From the NCBI GenBank assembly GCA_001179505.1, contig CDMY01000436.1, positions 186,001-250,000 of the forward strand: a stretch of DNA of 64,000 bases, in the 5' to 3' direction. Numbering within the stretch: position 1 is the stretch's first letter; the number at the start of each line of letters is the position of its first letter. Origin of the DNA: Vitrella brassicaformis CCMP3155 (Eukaryota > Protista > Chromerida). This document shows positions 60,019 to 64,000 of this stretch, one piece after another. The notes below the pieces were generated by a model. That model ran no database searches and was not told the DNA's origin. It saw only the letters and a program-made list of their open reading frames with translations. The position numbers and the translations under genes were made by a program.

Positions 60019-61480
60019 ATGGATGTCAATACTAAGGCACACATCCGGACACACATGCATAGGACTGCATGCATGAGCCGTCCATCTATGCGGGTATTTT
60101 AGTATTTCGAGTTCGGTGGTCGGCCTTAACTTGCGTGCGTGCGGACAGGTGCGTGGATGTCAATTGACGGCCATGTCATTGGATGACATGCAAGCCAGGT
60201 CACAGTCATGGATTCATGCGCACACGCGTCACACCGACACACACATGCAGTCGTTTGCCCGCACTCGGGTCACTCACACGCAGCCACTCACTGAGACGGG
60301 CAGACACTCACTCCTTCTCTGGCTGTCTGTTTGTGCGATGGTCAGTTCGTTGGTGTGTCTCTCTTGTCGTCTCGTGTTGATGGTGGTGTGTGTGGCTCAT
60401 GCCCTTGGCTCATGCCTTGTCGTCTTGGTTGTCGTCTTGCTCCTCCCACTCGGCCTTCTCCTGCTCGTAGCGCTCCTTGTCCTCAGCAGCCTGACACACA
60501 CAGACAGACACACAGACAGACAGAGGGGAGCGAGGACGGATGGATATCATGTCGTCTCAGTAGTGTGTGTGTGACCTGATCCTTGTACGGCTGCTTGTCG
60601 ATGTCCGACATCTCCTTCCACTCAGCACCTGCACACAATGCATATGCATGGCGCATACGTGCGGGGCGTGGGTGTGGTGTTTTTGATGTTTGTTGCATGT
60701 CTGTTTGTTGCACACCCAACAACTTCGCAATCTCGCCAAATGCCATTGTCGGGTTCTTCTCCTTGACCTCTGGCCTGCGCTCCATCGAGAAGTACAAGTC
60801 TGCAATGACACACACAGGAGACGCACCACACATGAGACAGACCTCTCTCCATCAGCTGCCTGTCTGTCTCTCTCTGTCCGTCTGTCTGTCTGTCTGTATC
60901 ATGCATGTGGGTGTGTGTGGGTGTGCATACAGGCAGTTCGAGGTCGCTTGGGTCCCGCTTTCTTGGTGCTGTCCTTCTTGCCCTTCTTCTCGCCCTTGCC
61001 CATCGACTTGCTGGAGGTTGTGCTCTTGGATGACGCCTTCGCCATGGCTCGCTCACTCACACTCGATGGATCGATGGGTGGGTCGATGGCCGACGGATGG
61101 ATGGGTGGGTGACAGTCACTCGGAGGCAGAGAGCGAGCCGGCGCACAGAGACACAGGCAGTGGGGTGGGCGACGAGTCACTCACTCGATGGATCAGTGAG
61201 TCGTGCCGATGGATCAGTCAATCAACAGTCAGTCAGTCAATCAATCAGCGCCAAATGAGAGCGATTCGACAGAGAGAGAGACGCGTTGCTTTGCTTCGCT
61301 TCTGAATGACCAGATTGATCGATCACTGCGTAAATGTGTACATCTGTATAGCTAGATGCACGATTGAGTACCGTTCACTCACTGGCGATCGTCTGTACAC
61401 ACGTATCGAAGCCACCATGTGTACGCCGTTCATTGGTCTGTACAGAAGCGTTGAATATCGAAGTCGCCAATTGATGTCAC
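60019..61480 (-). repeat. Right arm of the long-range inverted duplication (HMGB locus)
   Basis: Its reverse complement matches 4195-5576, including introns and both flanks. Confidence 0.92.
60410..61045 (-). CDS. NHP6/HMGB-like single HMG-box chromatin protein (intact copy), 4 exons
   Basis: MAKASSKSTTSSKSMGKGEKKGKKDSTKKAGPKRPRTA|YLYFSMERRPEVKEKNPTMAFGEIAKLLG|AEWKEMSDIDKQPYKDQ|AAEDKERYEQEKAEWEEQDDNQDDKA*. Confidence 0.93.
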
Positions 61481-62244
61481 GGACTGCATGAACAATCCAC
61501 TTCATCTCCGGAGCCGGCACACCAAGCACTTAGTGGATGAGTAAATCACTAGACGGTGAAATTAAGTGGGACAGAGATGCTCCAGGTGTCAGCAGTGTAT
61601 CATTCAGCGTGCGAATGCATGTACATGTCTTGGTGGCTTGGTGAGCACACCACTAACCACTAGCCGCAGAGCATTCTCCACCCCGCACCACGCACCAGAG
61701 CAAAGTCCCATCAAAAACACCTAAACGGTAAGTCGCGTGTGTACACGCACGCACACACGCATACCACACGAATGGAATGCAACACGCATTACAGATGGGC
61801 TCGGCTCACTCGAGCGGACTCGCCCTGGATGGATGGACACGAACACACGCAATGTACCGCCTCTTCCCCTTTCCTCTCTCTCTCTCTCTCTCTTTCTGCC
61901 TCTTAATACAAAGAGCCACTCTGTACACACGACGATTGCACGAATCGACGGAAGGCCGCCTTCCATCCGCCTTGCATTCAAAACATTCAAAACTACAGGC
62001 ATACACCAACCACACAGACACCAACACATACATACATCCATACATACATACATACATGCGCCTCATTCCCCGCTCCTTCCGTGCTGTGCAGGCTCTGCAC
62101 AAGTGCACGAAAGGCACACACATGCATCCATCCATCCATGAATGCACGAAAACATTACACTACGCATCCATGCTTAGCCATACATACACACACAAGCAGC
62201 ATCTCATCTTGCCCTCGCCCGACTCGCTTCCTGCTCGTCGGCCT

Positions 62245-63565
62245 TCACAAACTGTATCGCCTTGCGCATCCATCGCCCCTTTGTGCGTCTTGGAGCATCT
62301 GCTCACGCTGCAGCCGAAACACCTCTGACAGGGGCGCCATGGAGCCATCCTTCTCGCACCGCCGCACACTCTGGGAGGCGTGGATCGCCTCGGCAGTCGA
62401 CTGCTGCGCCTTGATGTCGCTGCGCAACATGTAGTTCGCCTGACACAATACATACATACACCACACAGTGTGCCATGCCATGCGTGTGTATATCCGTCCA
62501 TGCGCCTCTCTCTTGCATTGACTGAGTGACTGACTGACCCAAATGATGCAGCTGGCACCCATGTCGAAGAGCCGGGTGATGTCCGTGCTCTCGTTCTCGG
62601 CGTACGTGGTGGGAATGAGCACAATCGGCACGGGCTCGCGCCTCCCGCCCTCGCCCTCCTTGACCCACTCCTCCAGAAACGCCTCAACCTCATCAGATGT
62701 CCGCTCAGTCGAATGGATGATCAGCGCATCAGCACCGGCGTCACGATACGCCCGCGCACGCCGAATGCACTCCGGCAGGCCCCAGCCGGCAGGCAGCGCA
62801 TCAGTCCTGGCCACGATCTGGAAGTGGTTGCCGGGGTCGTCTTGCTGGAGGCTCTCGCGACACTCCTGCAGCATGTCGCAGAACTCGGCTGCGTCAGCCA
62901 GGGCCTCCCTGTCCCCGTCAGCAGGCTTGATGAGGGCATTCCTTTTCGGGAAGGTTCGGTCCTCAAGGCACACACTGACAACAGATGGATTGATGGTATG
63001 GGTGGGTGGACACAGCAGCAGCCGGTGTGTTGTGCGTCGTGAGTGCTGCGTTAGCCCTGACCAACCCACCCTGCGATGCGCCGCTGATTGAGCCTGCGGA
63101 CGAACTGGCTGGCAATTTTAGAGTGGCCATGGCCTGAGTCGCCTGTTCGTTCACCGAAAGAGGAAGGAGGAAAGATAAGAGTGTCCTGTCCTATCCTGTG
63201 CGATGCGATGCCTGGCCGCTGACTGACCGTCCACGAGGACAGGGATTCGGACGGAGTCGGCGACGCGCCCCATCATGTCGGCCACCTCAGTCCAGGACAA
63301 CTCATTCGCATCACGCACACCCATCAAGGTGGACAGACCCAAAGATGAACCCCAAACACCCTGTTGTGTTGCACCATCACCCACACAGACACAGACACAA
63401 ACGTCAAACACAAACACAGCAACTAACGCGAGGCTGCTTTCTGGATTCATTGGCACGTACCTGGAAGCCCTTCTCTTCAGCGATTCGAGCCCACATAGGG
63501 ATGGGCGCGTCAATCAGGAAGCCTCGACGCCTCAGCAAGTCCCTCAGCAGCGTCCCCTTGTGCAT
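62245..63565 (-). CDS. pepM: Phosphoenolpyruvate phosphomutase (PEP mutase, C-P bond formation), 5 exons
   Basis: MHKGTLLRDLLRRRGFLIDAPIPMWARIAEEKGFQ|GVWGSSLGLSTLMGVRDANELSWTEV...PVLVDG|DSGHG...RRLNQRRIAG|VCLEDRTFPKRNAL...QIVARTDAL.AGWGL.E.IRRARAYRDAGADALIIHS...PIVLIPTTY...IIW|ANYMLRS...EVFRLQ. Carries the PepM-diagnostic EDxxFPKxN loop and GVRDxNExSW. Confidence 0.88.
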
Positions 63566-64000
63566 CTCTCCGGGTACACATTCATGCAAACCGCTCACAC
63601 ATACAAGATCTGTACAGGATCTATCAAGACAAGACCTATACACTCCTTCCCCCGCTCTCTTCCCTCCTCTCCTCCTCTTCTAAGCTCGCAAAGTGGATCG
63701 CCCACTTCCACGCTCCCCAAGAGATGACTCCTTGACGACCTGGCGACGATACTGTACAACTGTAAGACGTTGAAATGAGAACACAAACATGCGACTGTTC
63801 TGTTCTGAGTGAGGTCTTGTCCTTTGTCATGTCATGGCAGGTTTGTGTTCATCATCTCGGCGCCCTCCACTCCTTCCTTTGCCTCGTCTTGTCTGTCCCA
63901 AAAGGGAAACAAGCCGGCCATGAGTCAAGCACCGGTAGGCCGCACTCACATTCCGGCACGTGAAGGTCCTGCCTGGATCCATCTACTGCCGTTGTGTGTG

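What the first reader, a model, noticed from the sequence alone, without database searches (positions are those of the whole stretch)
62245..63565. PEP phosphomutase: phosphonate (C-P bond) biosynthesis in a photosynthetic alveolate
PepM is the committed entry enzyme of nearly all phosphonate pathways (2-aminoethylphosphonate lipids and glycans, phosphonate antibiotics). The spliced protein keeps the residues known from Mytilus/Tetrahymena PEP mutase: W and S of the WGS motif, the RD Asp, DxD, the ED Glu, the FPKxN loop Lys/Asn, the VAR Arg and the IHS His. These distinguish it from isocitrate/methylisocitrate lyases. Deviations (WGSSLG for WGSGLS, KRNA for KTNS, DAPIPMW for EAHNGLS) could mean altered activity, for example towards phosphonopyruvate hydrolase. 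The gene has four spliceosomal introns, so it is not bacterial contamination. It implies phosphonolipid or phosphonoglycan production by a marine alga related to apicomplexans, relevant to the marine reduced-P cycle.
Basis: partly seen in the sequence, partly recalled or inferred. Interest (0 to 1): 0.75.

Follow-up and report, generated by a model that had tools for sequence, protein, structure and literature searches.

The report
Divergent PEP mutase gene in Vitrella
The alga Vitrella brassicaformis transcribes and correctly splices a nuclear gene for a PEP-mutase-type enzyme, the kind that makes carbon-phosphorus bonds, but this copy lacks several residues that every other such enzyme keeps, so whether the alga makes phosphonates is still unproven.

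Summary
A five-exon, minus-strand gene (CDS 63565..62245, 313 codons) has four GT..AG introns. Spliced contigs from three public runs remove exactly those introns. The DNA is Vitrella brassicaformis CCMP3155, and the product is already deposited (CEM12677.1), with UniRef naming it "Phosphoenolpyruvate phosphomutase". The deposited protein starts 23 residues too late.

It belongs to the PEP mutase (PepM) clade:
- TIGR02320 scores 238 bits against 142 for phosphonopyruvate hydrolase.
- The best solved relative and best fold match is mussel PepM.
- It sits inside core PepM in the tree (100/99 support).
- The Mg-binding and phosphoryl-binding residues D58, D85, D87, E114, K120, N122, R159 and H190 are all kept.

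It is also an outlier:
- It scores below the equivalog cut-off (319.55).
- It fails the EDKX5NS motif used in the literature to call PepM; it reads EDRTFPKRNA.
- It alone has Ala for Ser123 (122/122 Ser in relatives) and Pro for His26.
- It has a 3-residue insertion in the gating loop and a very long branch.

It keeps 56 of 67 near-invariant positions, so it is under selection and not decaying. Its nearest relatives are bacterial PepMs sitting next to phosphonopyruvate decarboxylase genes. No downstream pathway gene lies within the window or about 9.5 kb beyond its end, and the rest of the genome could not be searched. This is an ordinary kind of gene with an atypical active site. Phosphonate production is plausible but unshown.

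The parts
63566..63670 (-). 5' leader, at least 105 nt, with three out-of-frame upstream ATGs (63602, 63585, 63581)
   Evidence: Spliced contig X7 reaches 63670. ATG scan.
63461..63565 (-). Exon 1 (35 codons, Met at 63565). It encodes the N-terminus and barrel strand beta-1. The deposited protein starts at the second Met (63496).
   Evidence: Aligns to PepM profile positions 3-38 at 8.7 bits. P0001 begins MWARI.
63491..63511 (-). Codons for DAPIPMW, which replace the EAH(N/S/D)GLS segment of PepMs (His 121/121, Ser 120/121 in relatives)
   Evidence: Column counts.
63361..63460 (-). Intron 1, 100 nt, GT..AG
63228..63360 (-). Exon 2: the WGSS segment that aligns with PepM Ser46-Gly47-Leu48 (W44, S46 and L48 kept) and the RD Asp58
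   Evidence: TIGR02320 39 bits. PepM profile positions 39-82, 51 bits.
63143..63227 (-). Intron 2, 85 nt, GT..AG
63070..63142 (-). Exon 3: DGDSGHG (Asp85, Asp87), followed by the deviant HSKIASQ in place of NFNN(V/A)RR
62975..63069 (-). Intron 3, 95 nt, GT..AG. I first misread it as non-canonical; the RNA joint settles it.
   Evidence: Joint 62974/63070 in X1, X7 and X8..
62539..62974 (-). Exon 4: Glu114, the gating loop, Arg159 and His190
   Evidence: TIGR02320 110.9 bits against TIGR02321 74.2. Mytilus PepM 95 bits.
62935..62964 (-). Codons for EDRTFPKRNA, the variant of the PepM signature EDKX5NS (Lys116 to Arg, Ser123 to Ala)
   Evidence: Ser is 122/122 in relatives, and no relative has Arg at Lys116. 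Motif definition in PMC6697681 and PMC8942020.
62917..62925 (-). Three-residue insertion (P-A-D columns) in the mobile gating loop, absent from 99-100% of 134 relatives
62440..62538 (-). Intron 4, 99 nt, GT..AG. It has no in-frame stop, which is why ORF listing shows one 274-aa ORF.
62245..62439 (-). Exon 5 with stop codon: the WAN-x-x-R strand and the C-terminal EVFRLQ helix
   Evidence: PepM profile positions 235-286, 40 bits.
61438..62244 (-). 3' UTR of about 800 nt, rich in short tandem repeats
   Evidence: Contigs X7 and X8 run unbroken from 62438 down to 61438 and 61427. Repeats.

Best explanation
This is an expressed, intron-bearing nuclear gene of Vitrella brassicaformis. It encodes a cytosolic protein of 313 residues with no N-terminal extension. 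[quoted passage not shown]

Most likely it still binds Mg2+ and an oxo-acid through Asp58, Asp85, Asp87 and Glu114. Most likely it still holds the migrating phosphoryl group with Arg159, His190, Asn122 and Lys120 under a closing loop, interconverting PEP and phosphonopyruvate. This would be the entry step to 2-aminoethylphosphonate-type compounds.

Shown: gene structure, splicing, family and clade membership, retained and lost residues, and fold. Inferred: catalytic activity, and any phosphonate output, which also needs a phosphonopyruvate-consuming partner enzyme that I could not look for.
For: Gene and context:
- Exact removal of four GT..AG introns in spliced contigs of three runs.
- Eukaryotic neighbours: HAP2-GCS1, HMG-box, MCM6, VTT.

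Family:
- TIGR02320 is the best family at 238.4 bits, against PPH 142.5, PrpB 86.9 and CPEP mutase 52.7. The PepM/PPH ratio is the same as in bona fide PepMs.
- The best solved relative is Mytilus PepM at 222 bits, against PPH at 138.
- AlphaFold model: pLDDT 91.6. Best fold matches: PepM 1pym and 5unc at TM 0.85, PPH at 0.79.

Tree and residues:
- The maximum-likelihood tree with a site-heterogeneous model places it inside core PepM (100/99). Its sisters (99/93) are two bacterial PepMs encoded immediately upstream of a TPP-type phosphonopyruvate decarboxylase.
- Those sisters share 6 of its 11 departures from near-invariant columns, so those departures coexist with a Ppd-linked PepM.
- All Mg-binding and phosphoryl-binding residues named for the Mytilus enzyme in the review PMC7916636 are kept except Ser123, whose role that review calls hypothetical.
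- It keeps 56 of 67 near-invariant columns although it is only 44-51% identical overall, which indicates purifying selection.
Against: - It scores 238 bits, below the 319.55 equivalog cut-off. The deposited protein lacks 23 N-terminal residues, but exon 1 adds only about 9 bits.
- It fails the EDKX5NS filter that the field uses to call Ppm.
- Ser123 to Ala is unique: Ser in 122/122 relatives, and NS is kept even in the most divergent PepM-like sequences.
- His26 (121/121), Ser30, Asn94, Arg97 and Arg98 are also replaced.
- There is a 3-residue insertion in the loop that shields the reaction from water.
- The terminal branch is 0.91-1.05 substitutions per site against a median of 0.11-0.28.
- No close orthologue turned up in a 5.8-billion-protein word search; the best hit is 48% identical.
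- No Ppd or AEP transaminase lies in the 64-kb window or about 9.5 kb beyond its end.
- No paper links chromerids with phosphonates.
Confidence: 0.55

Rival explanations
1. It is a PepM-derived enzyme with a changed reaction. The remodelled gating loop (Ser123 to Ala plus 3 residues) and beta-1 end (His26 to Pro) could let water in or alter substrate choice. The protein might then hydrolyse phosphonopyruvate (PPH-like, for phosphonate scavenging) or act on another oxo-acid instead of forming C-P bonds.
For: - Unique replacements at positions invariant in 122 PepMs, and an insertion in the loop to which the PepM/PPH difference is attributed.
- Fails the EDKX5NS motif and the equivalog cut-off.
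- Long branch combined with retained selection, the pattern expected after a change of function.
Against: - Asn122, which most authors take to separate PepM from PPH (Thr in PPH), is kept.
- The PPH model scores far lower, and in the same proportion as for ordinary PepMs.
- The lyase Cys-Gly-His motif is absent.
- There is no positive evidence for any other substrate.
Confidence: 0.3
2. It is an expressed but catalytically dead or decaying relic of a PepM gene. Vitrella makes no phosphonates.
For: - Loss of several family-invariant residues.
- No close orthologue found in any other organism.
- Three upstream ATGs in the leader.
- No pathway partner seen nearby.
Against: - Intact 313-codon frame across five exons with precise splicing.
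- 84% of near-invariant columns are kept on a branch of about 1 substitution per site, far more than neutral drift would leave.
- All metal-binding and phosphoryl-binding residues are intact.
- Confident barrel model.
Confidence: 0.12
3. It is bacterial contamination of the assembly.
For: The nearest tree neighbours are bacterial.
Against: - Four spliceosomal introns are removed in RNA-derived contigs.
- It sits on a 380-kb contig between HAP2-GCS1, HMG-box and MCM6 genes.
Confidence: 0.01

Closest known systems
Mytilus edulis PEP mutase (PDB 1pym, 1m1b, 1s2t-w)
   Same: - Best sequence match among solved structures (222 bits) and best fold match (TM 0.85, rmsd 1.9 A, 42% identity).
- Same residues at W44, S46, L48, D58, D85, D87, E114, D115, K120, N122, R159 and H190.
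- Same C-terminal EVFRLQ helix.
   Different: - Gly47 to Ser, Lys116 to Arg, Ser123 to Ala, Glu161 to Asp.
- NFNNARR is replaced by HSKIASQ, and EAHNGLS by DAPIPMW.
- Three extra residues in gating loop 121-134.
- Further insertions of 4, 8, 3 and 2 residues.
Bacterial PepM-Ppd-SnoaL operons from metagenomes (P0027, P0029; loci L003-L005)
   Same: - Sister group in the tree (99/93).
- Shared rare states: Ser at 47, Asp at 161, loss of Phe93, the ALIIHS and ARTD strands.
   Different: - Only 36-39% identical.
- Bacterial, without introns, and directly followed by Ppd.
- They keep EDK..NS and the AH(D) of beta-1, and have no loop insertion.
- They lack the EVFRLQ C-terminus that Vitrella keeps.
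Variovorax phosphonopyruvate hydrolase (PDB 2dua, 2hjp; TIGR02321)
   Same: Same fold and the same metal-binding and Arg/His residues; 138 bits, TM 0.79.
   Different: PPH has Thr where PepM and Vitrella have Asn122. The Vitrella protein scores 96 bits lower on the PPH model than on the PepM model.
Tetrahymena PEP mutase and the ciliate AEP pathway (from established knowledge, not tested here)
   Same: An alveolate with PepM. Phosphonolipids are classic there, and a published survey found Ppm in 12% of protist genomes (PMC8942020).
   Different: No Tetrahymena sequence was available for comparison. Vitrella does not group with the one EukProt sequence in the set (P0181).

Membership tests
PEP mutase (PepM/Ppm, EC 5.4.2.9; TIGR02320) | TIGR02320 is the best-scoring family, ahead of TIGR02321 and the lyases | tested here: met
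   238.4 against 142.5 (PPH), 86.9 (PrpB) and 52.7 (CPEP mutase) on P0001. Exon by exon: 39, 110.9 and 20.1 against 24.9, 74.2 and no hit.
PEP mutase (PepM/Ppm, EC 5.4.2.9; TIGR02320) | Score at or above the curated equivalog cut-off (319.55 bits) | tested here: not met
238.4 bits for the deposited 290-residue protein. The missing exon-1 part adds only about 9 bits on a PepM profile.
PEP mutase (PepM/Ppm, EC 5.4.2.9; TIGR02320) | Ppm-specific motif EDKX5NS (PMC6697681, PMC8942020) | tested here: not met
   The sequence reads EDRTFPKRNA. Lys is Lys or Gln in 122/122 relatives and Ser is Ser in 122/122.
PEP mutase (PepM/Ppm, EC 5.4.2.9; TIGR02320) | Mg2+ site: Asp58, Asp85, Asp87, Glu114 | tested here: met
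   All four align identically to the Mytilus enzyme. Roles per PMC7916636.
PEP mutase (PepM/Ppm, EC 5.4.2.9; TIGR02320) | Phosphoryl-holding residues Arg159, His190, Asn122 and loop Lys120 | tested here: met
   All are kept. The neighbouring Ser123 is Ala.
PEP mutase (PepM/Ppm, EC 5.4.2.9; TIGR02320) | Phylogenetic position inside the PepM clade | tested here: met
   Core PepM clade 100/99. PepM-like group 100/100 against a methylisocitrate-lyase-like outgroup, with the LG+C20 model. No PPH sequence was available to include.
PEP mutase (PepM/Ppm, EC 5.4.2.9; TIGR02320) | Barrel fold with swapped C-terminal helix, closest to solved PepMs | tested here: met
   pLDDT 91.6. 1pym TM 0.85, ahead of PPH at 0.79 and the lyases at about 0.77. 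Only a monomer was modelled, so swapping itself was not tested.
PEP mutase (PepM/Ppm, EC 5.4.2.9; TIGR02320) | Coupling to a phosphonopyruvate-consuming enzyme (Ppd or equivalent) in the same genome | not testable with these tools
   None in the window or about 9.5 kb beyond its end. The Ppd word search was swamped by bacteria. The only other trace is an unchecked scan note, s1-235873.
PEP mutase (PepM/Ppm, EC 5.4.2.9; TIGR02320) | PEP/phosphonopyruvate mutase activity | not testable with these tools
   Needs an enzyme assay.
Phosphonopyruvate hydrolase (TIGR02321) | Thr in place of PepM Asn122, and a score above 374.4 bits | tested here: not met
   Asn is kept. Score 142.5 bits.
Isocitrate / methylisocitrate lyase type members | K-x-C-G-H catalytic loop | tested here: not met
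   The loop reads KRNAL. The outgroup sequences read K(R/K)CGH.

The most novel reading that the evidence does not exclude
The chromerid gene could be a formerly bacterial, Ppd-linked PepM that has been rebuilt around its gating loop and beta-1 end. On this reading it is a new PepM-derived activity, for example a phosphonopyruvate-cleaving or otherwise altered enzyme. Alternatively it is a PepM that works without the 'invariant' Ser123 and His26, which would show that the EDKX5NS filter used in environmental surveys misses real eukaryotic C-P bond formers.
Probability: 0.25. Interest if true: 0.55.

Novelty: new member of a known kind. Interest (0 to 1): 0.33.

Why it matters
[quoted passage not shown] Motif-based surveys (EDKX5NS) would then be undercounting such producers. 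If it has changed function, it is a natural experiment on which 'invariant' PepM residues are really needed. As it stands, it is a database-annotated homologue of a well-known enzyme in a group (alveolates) where phosphonate synthesis is classic. The interest is therefore moderate to low until activity or a pathway partner is shown.

Tried and rejected
- **Non-canonical intron 3.** I first read intron 3 as non-canonical. RNA joints and a recount show an ordinary GT..AG intron.
- **Search for a Vitrella Ppd.** I queried the word search with a bacterial Ppd taken from a PepM operon (L002).
- **tblastn on local DNA.** Three bacterial Ppd sequences and one AEP transaminase were run against the window and the 21-kb locus L001. 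Only chance hits appeared.
- **The scan's own notes.** The only trace is an unchecked title about a 'foreign Ppd gene in a 16S-23S spacer' on another piece of this genome. A look-up by sequence was blank, which means nothing.
- **Cluster names for the top hits.** None carried names apart from the Vitrella entry itself.
- **Scan of bacterial and archaeal species genomes** for the P0027/P0029 subclade. Nothing closer than 43% identity was found.
- **Primary structural papers** on Mytilus PepM and PPH are not held. Residue roles rest on the review PMC7916636.
- **The large HMMER library search** was not used. The family is not in doubt, and a close orthologue would have been caught by the word search.
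- **Bacterial contamination and a dead pseudogene** were both considered and rejected. The grounds are introns plus eukaryotic neighbours for the first, and an intact frame plus strong retention of conserved sites for the second.

Full report
**What is there**

On the minus strand, the interval 63565..62245 holds a five-exon coding sequence of 942 nt (313 codons plus stop). The exons are 63565-63461, 63360-63228, 63142-63070, 62974-62539 and 62439-62245. They are separated by GT..AG introns of 100, 85, 95 and 99 nt. I first misread intron 3 as non-canonical; a recount and the RNA data show it is ordinary.

Laying the contigs of four public runs on 61000-64000 gave one long spliced contig in each of three runs, from three studies:
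- X1, 1701 nt
- X7, 1854 nt
- X8, 1776 nt

Each contig skips exactly these four intervals and matches the exons without a single difference. The contigs also define:
- a 3' UTR of about 800 nt, reaching down to about 61438;
- a leader of at least 105 nt, which carries three out-of-frame upstream ATGs.

The gene is therefore transcribed and correctly spliced. The run types are not on record, but a precisely intron-less contig is in itself the mark of cDNA.

**Whose DNA, and is it already known**

The word search returned a 290-residue protein of Vitrella brassicaformis CCMP3155 that is identical over the exons. Its identifiers are CEM12677.1, UniRef100_A0A0G4FHA6 (named 'Phosphoenolpyruvate phosphomutase') and EukProt EP00390_P012077. 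It lies on the 380-kb contig CDMY01000436.1 of GCA_001179505.1.

Vitrella is an alveolate of the Colpodellida. The genes within 10 kb on either side are plainly eukaryotic: a VTT-domain protein, HMG-box proteins, HAP2-GCS1, an aldose epimerase and MCM6. Contamination is excluded.

The deposited model starts at the second Met (63496). The 23 residues upstream of it align to the PepM N-terminus, with exon 1 covering profile positions 3-38.

No paper in the library links Vitrella or Chromera with phosphonates. The chromerid genome paper does not mention them.

**Family**

Results on the separate exons:
- The exons tile a profile built from 122 PepM homologues without gap or overlap.
- On NCBIfam, exons 2, 4 and 5 score 39, 110.9 and 20.1 bits on TIGR02320.
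- The same exons score 24.9, 74.2 and nothing on the phosphonopyruvate hydrolase model TIGR02321.

Results on the deposited protein (P0001):
- It scores 238.4 bits on TIGR02320, 142.5 on TIGR02321, 86.9 on PrpB and 52.7 on CPEP mutase.
- The PPH/PepM score ratio is 0.60, the same as for three other PepM hits from the search, one of which (P0004) sits in a pepM-Ppd-AEPT cluster (0.59-0.67). The protein is uniformly divergent and has not shifted towards PPH.
- Among solved structures the order is Mytilus PepM (222 bits), Streptomyces PepM (158), PPH (138) and then the lyases.
- An AlphaFold model (pLDDT 91.6, pTM 0.88) matches PepM structures best (TM 0.85). PPH follows at 0.79 and the lyases at about 0.77.

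**Residues**

Against the Mytilus enzyme, all of the following are kept:
- W44, S46, L48
- D58, D85, D87
- E114, D115
- K120, N122
- R159, H190

According to the review PMC7916636, Asp85 binds the metal directly. Asp58, Asp87 and Glu114 hold its water ligands. Arg159 and His190 hold the phosphoryl group, 'hypothetically' together with Asn122 and Ser123. Most authors attribute the PepM/PPH difference to Asn122 being Thr in PPH, within the mobile loop 121-134. Vitrella keeps Asn122, and the lyase loop K-x-C-G-H is absent.

**But it is an outlier**

[quoted passage not shown] Vitrella reads EDRTFPKRNA.
- The score is below the equivalog cut-off of 319.55 bits.
- There is a three-residue insertion in the gating loop, absent from 99-100% of relatives, plus four other insertions.
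- The terminal branch is 0.9-1.05 substitutions per site, against a median of 0.11-0.28.
- The closest protein among 5.8 billion is only 48% identical.

Column counts in 122 PepM homologues:

| Mytilus position | State in relatives | Vitrella |
|---|---|---|
| Lys116 | Lys 110, Gln 12 | Arg |
| Ser123 | Ser 122/122 | Ala |
| His26 | His 121/121 | Pro |
| Ser30 | Ser 120/121 | Trp |
| Asn94 | Asn 121/122 | Lys |
| Arg97 | Arg 118/122 | Ser |
| Arg98 | Arg 118/122 | Gln |
| Glu161 | Glu 122/122 | Asp |

The N-S pair is kept even in the most divergent PepM-like sequences of the set.

**What tempers this**

A maximum-likelihood tree with a site-heterogeneous model gives these supports:
- The protein lies inside the core PepM clade (100/99).
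- The whole PepM-like group is separated from the lyase-like outgroup (100/100).
- Vitrella is joined, at 99/93, to two metagenomic bacterial PepMs, P0027 and P0029.

Each of these two is encoded immediately upstream of a TPP-enzyme gene of the phosphonopyruvate decarboxylase type, followed by a SnoaL-like gene.

These Ppd-linked enzymes depart from 19-22 of 67 near-invariant columns, against 11 for Vitrella. They share six of Vitrella's eleven departures, including Gly47Ser and Glu161Asp. Those changes are therefore compatible with a PepM working next to Ppd.

What remains unique to Vitrella is Ser123Ala, the beta-1 segment (His26Pro, Ser30Trp), Asn94Lys, Arg97Ser and the loop insertion.

Vitrella keeps 56 of 67 near-invariant columns (84%) while being only 44-51% identical overall on a branch of about one change per site. 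That is the signature of continued purifying selection, not decay. The sister relation to bacteria hints at an old transfer. Both partners are long branches, so I do not press that point.

**Pathway context**

PEP mutase's equilibrium lies towards PEP. By established knowledge, phosphonate output therefore needs a consuming enzyme such as Ppd.
This is unsurprising for a eukaryote.
- I could not search the rest of the Vitrella genome. My one attempt through the protein word search was swamped by bacterial Ppd.
- The scan's notes hold one unchecked title about a Ppd-like gene in a 16S-23S spacer elsewhere in this assembly. It may be organellar or contaminant, and I give it no weight.

**Verdict**

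This is a real, expressed PepM-clade gene in a photosynthetic alveolate. It is not a hydrolase or lyase by any test available.

It fails two standard membership criteria and has a uniquely altered gating loop and beta-1 end. Nothing yet shows that Vitrella makes phosphonates.

My estimates:

| Reading | Probability |
|---|---|
| Still a PEP mutase | about 0.55 |
| Changed activity | about 0.30 |
| Inactive relic | about 0.12 |

PepM in protists is known (12% of protist genomes in PMC8942020; Tetrahymena classically), and the gene is already named in UniRef. It is therefore a new, atypical member of a known kind, of modest interest.

**Left out**

The large HMMER library search was not justified.

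Noticed in passing
window 63496-63565 (-): The deposited protein CEM12677.1 / A0A0G4FHA6 starts at the second Met. It therefore lacks 23 residues that align with the PepM N-terminus and first barrel strand. The leader upstream of 63565 holds three out-of-frame ATGs (63602, 63585, 63581) that open short upstream reading frames.
   Followed up: partly
window 63761-63841 (+), and L001 9202-9577: A GT..AG joint on the plus strand in run X8 belongs to a divergently transcribed neighbour, with a called product of 98 residues and no Pfam hit. The two genes appear to share a short intergenic region of about 100-250 nt.
   Followed up: no
L001 3562-7353 (about 2.1-5.9 kb beyond the window's end): A HAP2-GCS1 gamete-fusion gene (821 residues) lies close upstream, flanked by HMG-box genes on both sides of the PepM gene.
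   Followed up: no
L003 1203-3784, L004 1615-4196, L005 1229-3750: Bacterial metagenome operons of the form pepM - Ppd - SnoaL_2. They encode a very divergent PepM subclade (GKCDRNE, WISS) that lacks the C-terminal EVFRLQ helix. No relative closer than 43% identity was found among 185,579 species genomes.
   Followed up: partly
window 62121-62144 and 61226-61247: Short CATC and TCAG-type tandem repeats in the 3' UTR and beyond attract pieces of unrelated, much deeper contigs in all four runs. These show up as spurious 'joints' with 30 foreign letters. The 3' UTR is full of 2-12 nt microsatellites.
   Followed up: partly
window 62440-62538 (-): Intron 4 is 99 nt long and has no in-frame stop. 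A mechanical ORF list therefore shows exons 4 and 5 as one 274-residue ORF, and an unspliced transcript would encode a 33-residue in-frame insertion.
   Followed up: no
PepM alignment (P-ids): The Lys of the published EDKX5NS filter is Gln in 12 of 122 otherwise typical PepM homologues and Gly in one divergent one. The filter's Lys is thus less universal than its Asn-Ser.
   Followed up: partly
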